From positions 124,001 to 188,000 of IMG/VR virus record IMGVR_UViG_3300015265_000001: 64,000 bases of DNA, one strand, 5' to 3'. Shown here piece after piece: positions 3,055 to 6,327 of this stretch. The translations under genes and the position numbers were made by a program. The notes below the pieces were generated by a model. It ran no database searches, was not told the DNA's origin, and was given only the letters and a program-made list of their open reading frames with translations. Position 1 is the first letter of the stretch. The number at the start of each line of letters is the position of its first letter.

Positions 3055-4413
3055 ATGGAAATGCCAAAGCCGATAGCCAACATCATTGCGCACGCAAATG
3101 CCATTGATGCAGTTGGTTATGAGAAGATTTTTACCGTTGACGCGACGATCATTACCCCGACTGAGCAGATCCCGTTGTTGATCCCTAACGGGTTTGCTTG
3201 TTTGGCGTTGTTTGGTCCTGCTCATGGGGGTGGCGTCTCTCACAGCGATAACGCTCGTATCAAGGCCCAGATCCAGCCGGGTGTTTACATGCGTAAGGTA
3301 CTGCCCAATAAAGACAACCTCTTTATCGAGGTGGTTGAACGGGTAGGTATCACGCAGATCATGCGTCGTTGGCGTGCAGTTCCTTTGGGAGATGCAGACC
3401 CGGAGATGCAGGGTGGTAACTCCGCTCTGGCAGACCTGACAACCAAAGATGCAACCAACATGATTACCGTGACCTTTCAGTTGTTTGAAACGGGCTATGC
3501 CCTGCTCAAGAACGAACTGGTTGCAGACACCCTGTTGATGGCGACTCTTAAGGATGTGCTGCACGGGATCCTGACGGAGTACGGTCAGCAATTGACGTTG
3601 ACGGGGGCTGATGCTTTCAAAGGGGTCAATATTGAAGAGCCGGTAGACAACACTCGGGTCTTCAGTCATGTGGCTATTCCTGCTGCGGTTCCACTGCCTA
3701 AGCTGGCTATGTGGGTACAGGAACATGACGAGTTTGGTTTCTACAGTACGGGGTTGGGTTGCTACTACCGGAAGGGTATGTGGTGGATCTACCCTCTGTA
3801 CCGCACAGGGCGTTACGAGAAGGCTCCAAAGGTGCTGAACGTATACCGAGTGCCAGAAGACGTTATCCCTACTCTGAAGCGCTCGTATTACGTTGAAGGG
3901 AAGGTGGTGACGGTCCTGTCGACTGGTGGCGGGGCTACCAAGGATGGTAGTGACATCAAGAAACAAAACGTGGGTACTGGTAAGCGGGTAATCACGTCTG
4001 ATGCAGCCATGGCAGAAACCGGTGTGTATTACAACAAAGGTCAAGCCATGACCACCCGTGCTGACTCTCTGTCGGAGTACCAGACGTCTAAGCGTGCCAG
4101 TGGCGAGGAAGTGATGGGTTACCATTCGGAACCTACCAACAACCTCTGCAAGCTGTTAACTGAGAACGCCAAGAACGACGGTAACCTCGTACAGGTAGCC
4201 TGGCACAACTCTGATGCTTCCTTGATCGATCCGGCTATGCCGGTGCGTTACTACTACATGAGCGGCAGTAATAACCTGGTGTATCGGGAAGGCACTGTTC
4301 ATGTGATCAAGACCGAGTGGCAGATGGATACCCAAAGCGCAGGGCAACCTACCTTCAGAGAGATTTCTCTCTTAGGGCTGTTCATTTCCGATGAAGAGAT
4401 TCCTGCGGAATAA
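3055..4413 (+). CDS. Probable tail/baseplate structural protein (hub-like)
   Basis: 452 aa, GGAG RBS, beta-rich composition; last gene of the block. Function from recalled synteny. Confidence 0.4.
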   Translation: MEMPKPIANIIAHANAIDAVGYEKIFTVDATIITPTEQIPLLIPNGFACLALFGPAHGGGVSHSDNARIKAQIQPGVYMRKVLPNKDNLFIEVVERVGITQIMRRWRAVPLGDADPEMQGGNSALADLTTKDATNMITVTFQLFETGYALLKNELVADTLLMATLKDVLHGILTEYGQQLTLTGADAFKGVNIEEPVDNTRVFSHVAIPAAVPLPKLAMWVQEHDEFGFYSTGLGCYYRKGMWWIYPLYRTGRYEKAPKVLNVYRVPEDVIPTLKRSYYVEGKVVTVLSTGGGATKDGSDIKKQNVGTGKRVITSDAAMAETGVYYNKGQAMTTRADSLSEYQTSKRASGEEVMGYHSEPTNNLCKLLTENAKNDGNLVQVAWHNSDASLIDPAMPVRYYYMSGSNNLVYREGTVHVIKTEWQMDTQSAGQPTFREISLLGLFISDEEIPAE

Positions 4414-4417
4414 ATCT

Positions 4418-4495
4418 TCAGCCGACTCCCTATGCCTATGCTCGAAAGAGTAAACTCTTGGGAAACCAGGGGGGCCCAGAGGGCGAGTTGGCTGA
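4418..4495 (+). ncRNA. Candidate structured RNA: three-way junction with two GAAA tetraloops
   Basis: Closing stem TCAGCCGACTC/GAGTTGGCTGA; hairpins TGCTC-GAAA-GAGTA and CTCTTGG-GAAA-CCAGGGG; junction closed by GCC/GGC; terminator follows. Confidence 0.5.
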
Positions 4496-4507
4496 TATAA
4501 ACTAAGC

Positions 4508-4540
4508 CCCTTACCGTAGGTAAGGGTTTCCTTGTTCTGT
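4508..4540 (+). terminator. Intrinsic terminator
   Basis: CCCTTACC-GTA-GGTAAGGG followed by a T-rich tract. Confidence 0.65.
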
Positions 4541-4561
4541 TCTTAAGGGGAATTAGCAATT

Positions 4562-4705
4562 ATGTTAAACGACCTTACCAAGAAAAAGATCAAGTTTTCT
4601 GATTTGATCTTCCCAAAGCCCTCCAAAAAGCAAGAAGAGGCTCGCGCGGCCTTGGCCAAGCCAGAACACGACAAACTGATTGAAAACGCTCTGCGCGTCT
4701 TGTAG
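4562..4705 (+). CDS. Small basic hypothetical protein (47 aa), not in ORF track
   Basis: MLNDLTKKKIKFSDLIFPKPSKKQEEARAALAKPEHDKLIENALRVL; AAGGGG RBS. Confidence 0.55.
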   Translation: MLNDLTKKKIKFSDLIFPKPSKKQEEARAALAKPEHDKLIENALRVL

Positions 4706-4723
4706 GCTGTTATAGCGGCTATA

Positions 4724-4763
4724 TTAATACCCTATCCGCTCCTATGAGCGGATAGGGTATTAA
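4724..4763. terminator. Perfect 18-bp inverted repeat between convergent genes
   Basis: TTAATACCCTATCCGCTC-CTAT-GAGCGGATAGGGTATTAA; no U-tract on either side. Confidence 0.6.
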
Positions 4764-4779
4764 GCTCCATTAGAGTTCT

Positions 4780-6327
4780 TTATGCTGCTACATCAAAGTG
4801 ATCGAAATCATTTTCAAGGTCGCCATTGGCGTTGAGTCGTTGAGTCAAGCTGCGTCGGAATGCTGGTTTCTTGCCAATATCGTGTTCCAAACCTTTCTCG
4901 GGATGCAGGTCGTAGATGCCGAACCGTTCTTCTGGCAAACAACCCTCGCCCCGTTGTTTACCCACACACCAAGTGAAGTAAACCTTAAAGGTTGTTTTAG
5001 CCACATGGATGGTAATAACCACATCCACTTCGTTGGTGATCTTGGTCGAGGTTTCAGTAAGCGACTTACCGGAAACTTCTCGAGCGAAGTACACCTCGGA
5101 TTCTTCGTCCGATTCCTGTAGCTTCATCTTCGCCGCTGGCGAGAGTTGATGAGGGGTCAGGAAGCAGATACCGCGAGCAATGATGAAACCCCTGATCTTC
5201 CGGAAGTGCAATTGCAGCTTGTCGGACTTTGTTTCACCAGGGATCTTGTCGATGTTTTGCAGACCGCAGTAGTCGTAGGCCCAGAAGATGATCTCGTGGC
5301 CTTTGAGTTCCAGTTGACGGCAACGGGCGAACATGGTGTTGGCCGAGTCTTTACTGGAATCAATTTGGTTGATGATGAGATACCAACCATTTTCTTTAAA
5401 GCAGCTAACGATGGCATCAACGATGTCCATGTTCTCAGCAGACTGGAAGTCAGCAGCAATGCCGTGACGGGCTGAGAGCGCCAGCTTATACATGCGCATG
5501 ATGATCAGGTCCATGGTGTCTTCGGCAGACTCCAGGAGGATCGTAGGGATCTTGGCTTTATCCCGCAGCATCGGTTTGTTGTACAGACCAATACTGGCAA
5601 CCATATGACTTGTAGCGAGAGACTTACCCCGGTTAGTCAATGCTTCAATCATGTACATCTTGCCACGACGGAAACCGCCGTCAGGATTCAGAGACTGGTT
5701 CAAACCATGAAGACCTGACTTCATGATACCTTCGAGGCTGTTCTCGCGTTTGGCCATATCAATAATGGCATTAAACGAGTCAGGTGTTTCAGAAGTAACC
5801 TGTGCAACAATTTCAGACTGACGTTCTTCCAGACCTTGGTTGACGCCAGCTTGTACCAAGTCGATTAGGTTAGCCCAATCGTCTTTCCCCATGTCGCTGA
5901 TATCTTTGAAGTAAAAGTCCTTGATGGCCTTCTTGAACTTCTTGGAGAACTCTTCACCTTCCGAGTTCAAACGGATCTCAGAGATATGCTGGTAGATAAC
6001 CTTTCGCGTCTGTTCATCAGACGGATAGTCTTCCAGACCGTGGGTGATTGCTTCCTTGAGGCTCTCATCATTTTTGACAAACATGCTGACACGTTGCAAT
6101 AACGATGATTTTATGACCAGTACATCTTCTTCGGGCTGTTCCAACAGCCAGCGGATAGTTGCGCGAATGCTATCCCGGATGCCTTTGTCTTGAGTAAAGA
6201 CATCGGAGTTAGGGACAGGCAAATCGTTTAACGTATCTACCAGTTCCGTGATTAAGTTGGTGTCCTTCAGCTTCTTAGCCTGATATAGCGCAGACAACAA
6301 CTTAACCAGTACCAATAAATCGTTCAT
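4780..6327 (-). CDS. dnaB: DnaB-like replicative helicase
   Basis: GFRRGKMYMIEALTNRGKS Walker A, ILLESAE, FWAYDY and LTPHQL motifs; next to MCP as in phiKZ-like phages. Confidence 0.85.
   Translation of the reverse strand: MNDLLVLVKLLSALYQAKKLKDTNLITELVDTLNDLPVPNSDVFTQDKGIRDSIRATIRWLLEQPEEDVLVIKSSLLQRVSMFVKNDESLKEAITHGLEDYPSDEQTRKVIYQHISEIRLNSEGEEFSKKFKKAIKDFYFKDISDMGKDDWANLIDLVQAGVNQGLEERQSEIVAQVTSETPDSFNAIIDMAKRENSLEGIMKSGLHGLNQSLNPDGGFRRGKMYMIEALTNRGKSLATSHMVASIGLYNKPMLRDKAKIPTILLESAEDTMDLIIMRMYKLALSARHGIAADFQSAENMDIVDAIVSCFKENGWYLIINQIDSSKDSANTMFARCRQLELKGHEIIFWAYDYCGLQNIDKIPGETKSDKLQLHFRKIRGFIIARGICFLTPHQLSPAAKMKLQESDEESEVYFAREVSGKSLTETSTKITNEVDVVITIHVAKTTFKVYFTWCVGKQRGEGCLPEERFGIYDLHPEKGLEHDIGKKPAFRRSLTQRLNANGDLENDFDHFDVAA

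What the first reader, a model, noticed from the sequence alone, without database searches (positions are those of the whole stretch)
4418..4540. Candidate small structured RNA: GAAA-capped three-way junction before a terminator
Seen: about 80 intergenic nt fold into an 11-bp closing stem, a CCCU/AGGG helix with an internal loop, a GCC/GGC-closed junction and two hairpins that both end in GAAA tetraloops, followed by an intrinsic terminator. A competing helix AAGAG-UAAA-CUCUU (4446-4459) would break both hairpins, so two states are possible. Two TATG motifs (4431, 4437) match the phiKZ late-promoter core, and G4434 is exactly where the junction helix starts. Established: GNRA loops dock into receptors, and CCCUA../GAGGG resembles the IC3-type receptor. 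Inference: an independently folded ncRNA or 3' regulatory switch. I do not recognise the family.
Basis: partly seen in the sequence, partly recalled or inferred. Interest (0 to 1): 0.65.

Follow-up and report, generated by a model that had tools for sequence, protein, structure and literature searches.

The report
Conserved structured RNA before a phage terminator

Summary
The window comes from a 227-kb jumbo phage (IMG/VR record). Its nearest named relative is Pseudomonas phage EL.

- Bases 4418-4495 fold as drawn: an 11-bp closing stem, two GAAA hairpins and a GCC/GGC junction. The fold scores z = -4.0 against shuffles.

**What about 20 related sequences show.**
- The non-coding stretch is under selection. 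Core identity is 0.91, 0.69 and 0.55, against 0.62, 0.48 and 0.45 at neighbouring third codon positions.
- It is single-copy and always lies directly after the phiKZ gp101-like virion gene.
- Covariation supports hairpin P2 (93-98% paired, GNRA loop in 16 of 20) and the terminator, and supports P1 more weakly.
- The closing stem exists only in the window's own sub-lineage.
- The junction helices are not conserved, and the competing "switch" helix shows no covariation.
- Rfam and tRNA searches find nothing, and no RNA-seq data cover the locus.

**Best reading.** This is a structured 3'-terminal or intercistronic RNA module. Its P2 hairpin and G-tract core are probably a recognition site. It ends at a leaky terminator that gates read-through into a variable slot of accessory genes (here a conserved 47-aa gene). 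It may also be released as a small RNA of about 100 nt, either from the TATG motifs or by processing.

It is a new family of a known kind, of moderate interest.

The parts
3055..4413 (+). Upstream gene (452 aa, phrog_3245). It is the orthologue of phiKZ gp101 and EL gp071 and is annotated as a virion structural protein in some phages. The element always follows its stop codon.
4418..4428 (+). 5' arm of the 11-bp closing stem. It is lineage-specific. The UCAG(Y)C letters themselves are conserved more widely.
   Evidence: fold; the pairing is kept only in win, L008, L009 and L010
4431..4440 (+). Tandem TATG (CCTATG-CCTATG). The TAT..TAT letters are invariant or nearly so across relatives. They match the phiKZ late-promoter core (-3 TATG +1). 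In distant relatives the motif reads TATAC or TATTG. This tandem is unique in the genome.
   Evidence: PMC4666361
4440..4451 (+). Hairpin P1 (G-U, C-G, U-A, C-G; loop GAAA). It starts exactly at the G of the second TATG. It covaries among close relatives (CUC/GAG, UUC/GGA, UUCA/UGAA) and is variable or weak in distant ones.
4455..4472 (+). Hairpin P2 (7 bp; loop GAAA at 4462-4465). This is the conserved core. It is 93-98% paired, shows compensatory G-C/C-G changes at the loop-closing pair, and has a GNRA loop in 16 of 20 distinct sequences. Its many G-U pairs mean it can form only in + strand RNA.
4469..4487 (+). G-rich tract (GGGGGG..AGAGGGCGAG here; GGGKGGGGAG.. in relatives), conserved in sequence. 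In L027, L035 and L026 it forms the 5' arm of a terminator-like hairpin.
4485..4495 (+). 3' arm of the closing stem (GAGUUGGCUGA). In the sister sub-lineage this position holds a local hairpin, GUGGG-GAAA-UUCAC.
4496..4507 (+). A/U-rich linker (UAUAAACUAAGC), conserved as AUAUWAACUA(A)G.
4508..4540 (+). Intrinsic terminator T1. It is an 8-bp G+C-rich hairpin (4508-4526, loop GUA) with a pyrimidine/U-rich tail, UUUCCUUGUUCUG. The stem covaries fully in relatives. The tail resembles the tails of the genome's other terminators and the phiKZ terminator tail.
   Evidence: PMC10914365
4562..4705 (+). Conserved 47-aa gene. Its Shine-Dalgarno sequence AAGGGGA lies 28 nt after T1, so it can be transcribed only by read-through of T1.
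4724..4763 (.). Strong 18-bp bidirectional terminator T2. It closes both the + strand unit and the convergent DnaB-like helicase gene (4780-6327, - strand).

Best explanation
The stretch from the stop codon at 4413 to the terminator tail near 4535 is transcribed as the 3' end of the late virion-gene operon. It forms a conserved, structured intercistronic RNA module.

**Anatomy.** The invariant core is hairpin P2 (GNRA loop) with the G-rich tract that follows it. P1 and the lineage-specific outer pairings add further stable structure. The module ends at a moderately weak intrinsic terminator, T1.

**Proposed mechanism (inferred).**
- The stacked hairpins and T1 define the 3' end of the operon mRNA and protect it.
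- They also limit read-through into the variable accessory-gene slot that follows. In this genome that slot holds the 47-aa gene.
- The terminator stem drifts freely while P2 and the G-tract keep their sequence. P2 and the G-tract are therefore probably a recognition site for a trans-acting factor, which would tune termination or RNA stability.
- A discrete fragment of about 95-125 nt (P1-P2-G tract-T1) probably accumulates. It would arise by cleavage in the single-stranded UAUG region or from the TATG motifs acting as an internal late promoter.

**Shown:** conservation, strand, P2/T1/P1 pairing, single copy, synteny.
**Inferred:** transcription, 3'-end formation, factor binding, release of a fragment.
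For: - **Selection.** Core identity to the window is 0.91, 0.85, 0.69 and 0.55-0.64. Third-position identity in the adjacent gene is 0.62, 0.64, 0.48 and 0.42-0.46.
- **Pairing.** P2 is 98% paired on A2 and 93% on A3, with compensatory changes. All 8 pairs of the terminator change on both sides.
- **Strand.** P2 has many G-U pairs, and the reverse strand folds poorly.
- **Single copy and synteny.** Covariance model R1 finds one significant match per genome, all at the site after the gp101-like gene. The scores are 63.5 bits in the own genome, 44-64 bits in four complete relatives, and 20.9 bits (E = 0.008) in EL. The remaining matches have E above 0.7. Motif searches find no second copy.
- **The letters between the stop codon and the TAT motif take part in strong helices in three separate lineages.** The helices are the closing stem in the window group (z = -2 to -3), a 17-bp hairpin in L029 (z = -7.3) and a 16-bp helix in L031 (z = -5.4). 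This implies that the functional RNA starts upstream of the TAT motif.
- **The element follows the upstream gene, not the downstream one.** Downstream genes differ between relatives, and L026 and L035 have no same-strand gene after it.
- **Need for read-through.** The real 47-aa gene lies 28 nt after T1.
- **Precedent.** Short UTR-derived RNAs bounded by terminators are documented in phiKZ, 201phi2-1 and PAK_P3 (PMC10914365, PMC11512511).
Against: - No expression data exist. All public runs that hold the locus are DNA contigs.
- No partner for P2 and the G-tract has been identified.
- A simple stability element would not need sequence conservation.
- The architecture around P2 differs a great deal between lineages, so "one structure, one function" is not demonstrated.
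- EL matches the model only weakly (20.9 bits).
- phiKZ, RisingSun, FishSpeaker and OBP lack the element.
Confidence: 0.45

Rival explanations
1. The locus is an autonomous short transcription unit. The tandem TATG is a late promoter of the phage's non-virion RNA polymerase, with G4434 or G4440 as +1. Transcription makes a 94-100-nt RNA capped at its 5' end by hairpin P1. Most transcripts stop at T1, giving a small RNA. The transcripts that read through express the 47-aa gene. This would be a promoter-proximal attenuator, like the phiKZ and 201phi2-1 units where a start site is followed at once by a termination site.
For: - TATG with G as +1 is the established phiKZ late-promoter core and is bound by the beta-like subunit (PMC4666361, PMC12809450).
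- The TAT..TAT letters are the most conserved in the 5' part of the element.
- P1 begins exactly at the G of the second TATG in the 12 close relatives and in L025.
- A terminator lies within about 100 nt in the sequences examined.
- phiKZ has 17 such candidate short RNAs and 201phi2-1 has 11.
- A second tandem TATG preceded by a T-rich stretch lies upstream of another gene, at G000:65342.
Against: - The motif reads TATAC, TATTG or TATAA in L029, L030, EL, L033 and L048.
- Strong helices in the window group, L029 and L031 use bases upstream of the motif, or the motif itself. An RNA that begins at the motif would not contain them.
- L026 and L035 have no same-strand gene downstream.
- The putative RNA 4440-4535 alone folds with z of only -1.5.
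- The late-promoter consensus of EL-like phages is unknown, and TATG is a frequent tetramer.
Confidence: 0.25
2. An independently folded three-way-junction RNA has GAAA loops that dock into a CCCUA/GAGGG receptor. It acts as a ligand- or Mg-responsive two-state switch ahead of the terminator.
For: - The three-way junction is thermodynamically strong in this genome (z = -4.04).
- It recurs in L008, L009 and L010.
- GNRA loops are kept on P2 in 16 of 20 sequences and on P1 in most.
Against: - The closing stem and junction helices are absent from most relatives.
- The sister sub-lineage has a local third hairpin in place of the 3' arm.
- The competing helix shows no covariation.
- No conserved antiterminator pairs with the terminator's 5' arm, because the terminator sequences differ completely between relatives.
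- Downstream genes vary or are absent.
- No Rfam riboswitch or ribozyme matches.
- Stable tetraloops are common on this genome's hairpins in general.
Confidence: 0.07
3. P2 and the G-tract form an antitermination or trans-acting regulatory RNA. One version is a nut/boxB-like or put-like site that makes the phage polymerase resistant to T1 and later terminators. The other is a small RNA whose G-rich tract mimics the G-rich arm of the phage's CCYCCC/GGGRGG terminators.
For: - The layout is promoter-like motif, then GNRA hairpins, then terminator, then genes.
- P2 and the G-tract keep their sequence while the terminator stem drifts.
- The genome's other terminators carry C-rich and G-rich arms.
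- Antitermination has been suspected in 201phi2-1.
Against: - This rests purely on analogy.
- No candidate binding protein is known.
- A duplex scan against all translation-initiation regions gave no outlier.
- L026 and L035 have nothing to antiterminate into.
Confidence: 0.1
4. There is no specific function beyond transcription termination. On this view the extra hairpins and G-tract are decaying remnants of older terminators, conserved only through short divergence times.
For: - In L027, L035 and L026 the G-tract is itself the 5' arm of a terminator-like hairpin.
- The architecture is fluid between lineages.
Against: - P2 keeps its pairing through compensatory changes, and keeps its GNRA loop, in relatives whose flanking protein is only 55-60% identical and whose third positions are near saturation.
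Confidence: 0.08

Closest known systems
phiKZ and 201phi2-1 short RNAs made by premature termination just after a start site (for example phiKZ P112/T102, 71 nt; TU237/T131, 141 nt)
   Same: - The phage family is the same (nucleus-forming jumbo phages with their own RNA polymerases).
- A TATG-type motif is followed within about 100 nt by an intrinsic terminator, with a gene after it that needs read-through.
- The expected product is a structured RNA shorter than 250 nt.
   Different: - The locus is different. It lies after the gp101 orthologue, where phiKZ has no intergenic gap.
- The published examples were not compared in sequence, because their coordinates were not to hand.
- Here the bases upstream of the motif take part in the structure.
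- No transcript data exist for this element.
3'UTR-derived phage small RNAs (PAK_P3 ncRNA1 and ncRNA2; phiKZ 3'UTR_PHIKZ298)
   Same: - It lies at the 3' end of a late gene.
- It is bounded by a terminator.
- Release by processing, without its own start site, is plausible.
   Different: - The phages and sequences are unrelated.
- Those RNAs were found by RNA-seq and Northern blot. This element is defined only by comparative sequence analysis.
201phi2-1 sRNA005 / phiKZ sRNA upstream of gp182 (reported as conserved in EL and phiPA3)
   Same: It is a small structured RNA candidate conserved across jumbo-phage genera, next to a virion gene and a terminator.
   Different: - That RNA lies upstream of the 664-aa gp182 tail gene. 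This element lies downstream of the gp101 orthologue and upstream of small accessory genes.
- The phiKZ gp181-gp182 spacer shows no P2 or G-tract motif, only a standard terminator.
Lambda nut (boxA/boxB) and HK022 put antitermination RNAs
   Same: One or two short hairpins with GNRA-type loops lie between a promoter-like site and a terminator, with genes beyond it.
   Different: - Those systems act on the host RNA polymerase, through N and the Nus factors or directly.
- This phage family transcribes with its own non-canonical polymerases.
- There is no boxA, no N-like protein and no functional evidence.

Membership tests
Any Rfam 15 family (riboswitches, ribozymes, phage RNAs) | A match to a curated covariance model at or near its gathering score | tested here: not met
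   with E up to 10 on 3900-5100, the only hit that overlaps the element is a group-II fragment at 16.8 bits (gathering score 32, E = 0.99); no gathering-level hit anywhere in the 64-kb window; no tRNA or tmRNA.
Three-way-junction riboswitch / transcription attenuator | A conserved closing helix and junction that form the aptamer | tested here: not met
   the outer stem is 65% paired and its core pairs are unpaired in 7-11 of 15 sequences; the junction helix is 60% paired; the consensus keeps only P2 and the terminator; the closing duplex is significant only in win, L008 and L009.
Three-way-junction riboswitch / transcription attenuator | A conserved alternative pairing (antiterminator or switch helix) | tested here: not met
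   the competing helix is 69.9% paired against 69.1% in shuffles, and 231 of 500 shuffles do as well. By inspection, the terminator's 5' arms are unrelated between relatives, so no conserved antiterminator is possible.
Three-way-junction riboswitch / transcription attenuator | Consistent association with one class of regulated downstream gene | tested here: not met
   the downstream genes differ (47, 53, 125 and 178 aa, unrelated). L026 and L035 have no same-strand gene downstream.
GNRA tetraloop-receptor module | Conserved GNRA loops | tested here: met
   The P2 loop is GAAA, GAGA, GGAA or GGGA in 16 of 20 distinct sequences. The exceptions are GAAG, GAAU, GACA and L048, whose loop does not read as a GNRA tetraloop. 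The P1 loop is GAAA in the close clade and GUAA in L027 and L035.
GNRA tetraloop-receptor module | A conserved receptor helix (proposed CCCUA/GAGGG) | tested here: not met
   helices 2 and 3 are 60-67% paired, and the sequence is not kept outside the close clade. The receptor geometry itself cannot be tested with these tools.
phiKZ-type late promoter (non-virion RNA polymerase) | A TATG motif with G as the transcription start | tested here: inconclusive
   The motif is present twice (4431 and 4437) and TAT..TAT is conserved. It reads TATAC, TATTG or TATAA in five relatives. The start site cannot be tested because no RNA data exist.
Intrinsic terminator of the jumbo-phage type | A G+C-rich hairpin followed by a T/pyrimidine-rich tail, with the stem kept by covariation | tested here: met
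   predicts it; all 8 stem pairs change on both sides. The tail, UUUCCUUGUUCUG, resembles the tails of this genome's other terminators and the phiKZ tail CCTTATTTTGT. Actual 3' ends were not testable.
201phi2-1 sRNA005 / phiKZ gp182-upstream sRNA | A position in the 5'UTR of the gp182-family tail gene, with shared sequence | tested here: not met
   the upstream gene here is the gp101 orthologue; the downstream gene in EL is the 81-aa gp072; the phiKZ gp181-gp182 spacer has no P2 or G-tract motif.
Small protein-coding gene (22-codon frame from ATG 4432) | A reading frame kept among relatives, with a ribosome-binding site | tested here: not met
   One-base indels shift the frame between close relatives (L006, L009; L012 against L013). 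No Shine-Dalgarno sequence precedes the ATG.

The most novel reading that the evidence does not exclude
The P2 hairpin and G-tract may be the recognition site of an unknown factor that controls termination by the phage's own non-canonical RNA polymerase. That would be a nut/boxB-like processive antitermination or attenuation system in nucleus-forming jumbo phages. Alternatively, the released RNA may act in trans by mimicking the G-rich arm of the phage's terminators.
Probability: 0.1. Interest if true: 0.75.

Novelty: new member of a known kind. Interest (0 to 1): 0.4.

Why it matters
Nucleus-forming jumbo phages transcribe their genomes with their own RNA polymerases. Almost nothing is known about how termination, read-through and mRNA stability are controlled for those enzymes.

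Transcriptomics of phiKZ and 201phi2-1 has shown many short, terminator-bounded RNAs of unknown function.

This element has three useful properties:
- It is a comparatively well-defined, evolutionarily constrained example, with a small covarying core (one GNRA hairpin plus a G-tract).
- It is single-copy.
- It is present in a cultured phage (EL, about 83.74-83.85 kb), so its role in 3'-end formation, read-through or factor binding can be tested directly.

The attractive three-way junction is a lineage-specific elaboration, not the conserved fold.

Tried and rejected
- **Rfam and tRNA.** Rfam at permissive and gathering thresholds, and ARAGORN, found nothing relevant.
- **Repeated element.** The tandem TATG, the G-tract, the linker and the terminator tail have no second copy of the element in the 227-kb genome. 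The covariance model finds one copy per genome.
- **Reverse-strand function.** Rejected. P2 has many G-U pairs and the reverse strand folds at z = -1.7.
- **Small peptide from ATG 4432 (22 codons).** Rejected because of frameshifting indels among close relatives and the lack of a Shine-Dalgarno sequence.
- **A 5-codon mini-frame before the terminator.** Rejected by reading the sequences: most relatives have no start codon there.
- **DNA-level origin or packaging signal.** There is no GC-skew feature at 128 kb, and the genome ends (terminal repeats) are elsewhere.
- **G-quadruplex.** By inspection, four G3 tracts are present in some relatives (L025, L028, L031, L003) but not in the window, L026, L029 or L030.
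- **RsmA/CsrA (GGA) or RegB (GGAG) sites.** The motifs are not invariant. The window itself lacks GGAG and lacks GGA in the loops.
- **Conserved antiterminator with the terminator's 5' arm.** Not possible, because those arms are unrelated between relatives.
- **Trans targets.** A duplex scan of the putative RNA against 225 translation-initiation regions gave no outlier. The method is weak.
- **Expression.** No RNA run holds the locus. The runs laid are DNA contigs and show no ends.
- **Genome-wide late-promoter consensus.** The k-mer analysis recovered only an early-promoter-like motif, AT-rich plus CCTATATTAC. PHROG scans of genes behind TATG sites were uninformative.
- **Wider distribution.** phiKZ has no gap at the orthologous site. 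RisingSun, FishSpeaker and OBP lack the motif. A pattern scan of IMG/VR added only one new member, L076. The metagenome scan gave mostly records already held and only one new distant sequence, L048.
- **Supplementary tables.** The tables with the phiKZ short-RNA coordinates are not held.

Full report
**Source and setting**

The window is bases 124,001-188,000 of a 226,985-bp virus record with direct terminal repeats. The genes around the finding place it among nucleus-forming jumbo phages.
- The upstream frame 3055-4413 (452 aa, phrog_3245) is 54% identical to phage EL gp071. It is the orthologue of phiKZ gp101.
- A divergent DnaB-like helicase lies convergently at 4780-6327.
- The finding occupies the gap 4414-4561. 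It is followed by a 47-aa frame (4562-4705) and a strong 18-bp bidirectional terminator at 4724-4763.

**The observation**

The parts are:
- the 11-bp stem, 4418-4428 with 4485-4495;
- P1 at 4440-4451 and P2 at 4455-4472, both capped by GAAA;
- GCC/GGC at 4434-4436 and 4473-4475;
- TATG at 4431 and 4437;
- the competing helix at 4446-4459;
- a terminator hairpin at 4508-4526 with the tail UUUCCUUGUUCUG.

The 78-nt junction folds at -39.0 kcal/mol against -24.9 +/- 3.5 for dinucleotide shuffles, which is z = -4.04. P1 plus P2 alone give z = -3.63. The reverse strand gives only z = -1.68.

**Relatives**

Protein-anchored scans of IMG/VR and of JGI metagenomes gave loci whose gp101-like protein is 50-90% identical to the window's. 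Together with EL and one pattern hit (L076), these make about 20 distinct intergenic sequences.

All of them carry, directly after the stop codon:
1. a pyrimidine-rich stretch ending in UCAG-like letters;
2. a TAT..TAT motif (TATG-N2-TATG in the close clade; TATTG, TATAC or TATAA further out);
3. a variable first hairpin;
4. a second hairpin with a GNRA loop;
5. a G-rich tract (GGGKGGGGAG...);
6. a U-rich and then an A/U-rich linker;
7. a terminator hairpin with a CCUU-type tail.

The core is conserved well above the neutral expectation. Identity to the window is 0.91, 0.85, 0.69 and 0.55-0.64. Third codon positions of the adjacent gene give 0.62, 0.64, 0.48 and 0.42-0.46.

The element is single-copy. 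A covariance model built from 19 sequences finds one significant match per genome, always at this syntenic site. It scores 63.5 bits in the own genome and 44-64 bits in four complete relatives. In EL it scores 20.9 bits, E = 0.008. All other matches have E above 0.7.

phiKZ has no spacer at the orthologous position. RisingSun, FishSpeaker and OBP lack the motif.

**Which helices are real**

Counts on an alignment made without reference to structure:

| Helix | Cells paired | Notes |
|---|---|---|
| P2 | 98% | Compensatory changes, including G-C to C-G at the loop-closing pair |
| Terminator | 84% | All eight pairs change on both sides |
| P1 | 75% | CUC/GAG, UUC/GGA and UUCA/UGAA in the close clade |
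| Closing stem | 65% | Central pairs unpaired in 7-11 of 15 sequences |
| Junction helix | 60% | |

- The RNAalifold consensus keeps only P2 and the terminator.
- On the 19-sequence core alignment, P2 is 93% paired.
- A direct test of 5'-flank to 3'-region duplexes against shuffles is significant only for the window, L008 and L009. L010 belongs to the same sub-lineage by its near-identical sequence.
- In the sister sub-lineage the 3' arm is replaced by a local hairpin, GUGGG-GAAA-UUCAC.
- The competing helix that would make a switch is no better than shuffled: 69.9% against 69.1%.

The three-way junction is therefore a lineage-specific elaboration. The family-wide structure is P2 plus the G-tract plus the terminator. 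P2's frequent G-U pairs fix the functional strand as +.

**What it probably is**

Four observations shape the interpretation.
1. The element travels with the upstream gene, not the downstream one. Downstream genes are unrelated between relatives (47, 53, 125 and 178 aa). L026 and L035 have no same-strand gene after the element.
2. In this genome the 47-aa gene is real. Its protein is conserved, including the C-terminal AKPEHDKLIESALRVL. It begins 28 nt after the terminator, so the terminator must be leaky or regulated.
3. The letters between the stop codon and the TAT motif take part in strong helices in three independent lineages. These are the window group's closing stem, a 17-bp hairpin in L029 (z = -7.3) and a 16-bp helix with the G-tract in L031 (z = -5.4). 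An RNA that begins at the TAT motif would not contain these letters, so the structured species most likely reads in from the upstream operon.
4. The terminator stem changes sequence freely, while P2's loop, its closing pairs and the G-tract stay fixed. This suggests recognition by a partner and not mere stability.

I therefore favour a structured 3'-terminal or intercistronic module. It would set and protect the operon's 3' end and gate read-through into a variable accessory-gene slot. P2 and the G-tract would be a recognition site (confidence about 0.45).

**The promoter question**

TATG with G as +1 is the established late-promoter core of the phiKZ non-virion polymerase (PMC4666361, PMC12809450).
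- In favour: the TAT letters are the most conserved in the 5' half. P1 starts exactly at the G of the second TATG in 13 sequences. phiKZ and 201phi2-1 produce many short RNAs from a start site followed at once by a terminator (PMC10914365, PMC11512511).
- Against: the motif reads TATAC, TATTG or TATAA in five relatives. There are also the upstream-flank helices noted above.

An internal promoter making an RNA of about 95-100 nt is therefore a serious rival, or a co-existing route (0.25). Cleavage in the single-stranded UAUG region would give the same product. No public RNA data exist to decide between them.

**Comparison with what is known**

No Rfam family, tRNA or tmRNA matches.
- The nearest known kind is the class of terminator-bounded short RNAs of jumbo and other Pseudomonas phages. 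These include 5'UTR-derived RNAs in phiKZ and 201phi2-1 and 3'UTR-derived RNAs in PAK_P3.
- It is not the conserved sRNA005/gp182 RNA. That RNA sits before a different gene, and the phiKZ spacer there shows only a standard terminator.
- The resemblance to lambda nut or HK022 put is only architectural.
- The terminator tail here matches the style of the genome's other terminators and of phiKZ's.

**Verdict**

There is a real, conserved, strand-specific structured RNA element of an uncatalogued family. The three-way junction, the tetraloop receptor and the two-state switch are not supported by comparison. It is a new member of a known kind, with interest 0.4. The decisive experiments are feasible in phage EL.

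Noticed in passing
window 4562-4705 (+): A 47-aa gene is conserved as a protein in the close relatives and, more distantly, in L013. The C-terminal AKPEHDKLIESALRVL is nearly invariant. It has no Pfam or PHROG match. It sits between two terminators, so it depends on read-through of the first.
   Followed up: partly
window 4724-4763: An 18-bp perfect hairpin serves as a bidirectional terminator between the + strand unit and the convergent helicase gene. Its - strand tail, TATAGCCGCTATAAC, is of the 'TTATRGCYGC' type seen after many long hairpins in this genome.
   Followed up: partly
G000:C1 15386, 39432, 44462, 166209 (= window 42209) and 225170, among others: A recurrent intergenic motif: an AT-rich run followed by CCTATATTAC. 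It resembles the phiKZ early (virion RNA polymerase) promoter as I recall it. It is probably the early-promoter consensus of this phage.
   Followed up: partly
G000:C1 9983, 87526(-), 119642, 140879(-) (= window 16879) and 109384, among others: Many 13-20-bp terminator hairpins are followed by (C)TTATGGCTGCTT or TTATAGCCGC. The tail contains TATG, so it may be a terminator tail (compare the phiKZ YTTATKYYGT), a re-initiation promoter, or both.
   Followed up: no
G000:C1 65342-65351 (outside the window): A second tandem TATG (TATGCTATG) is preceded by a T-rich stretch and followed by a small hairpin. It lies 25-30 nt upstream of a 137-aa gene and is similar in layout to 4431-4440.
   Followed up: no
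L011 (IMGVR_UViG_3300048924_000100), about 150-350 nt after the stop codon: An extra 65-aa frame sits between the element's terminator and the 47-aa gene homologue. EL has four small genes in this slot, RisingSun has an HNH endonuclease, and FishSpeaker and OBP have none. The slot between the gp101-like gene and the helicase gene is a hotspot for accessory genes.
   Followed up: partly
window 4427-4466 (run X2): In a soil metagenome that holds a close relative, two assembled contigs end at 4427 and begin at 4466, inside the element. This is consistent with strain-level mosaicism at this spot.
   Followed up: no
L029:3848-3885 and L031:3833-3899: Distant relatives have evolved very strong lineage-specific helices that include the TAT motif. 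L029 has a 17-bp perfect hairpin (z = -7.3). L031 has a 16-bp helix between the post-stop C-rich flank and the G-tract (z = -5.4).
   Followed up: partly
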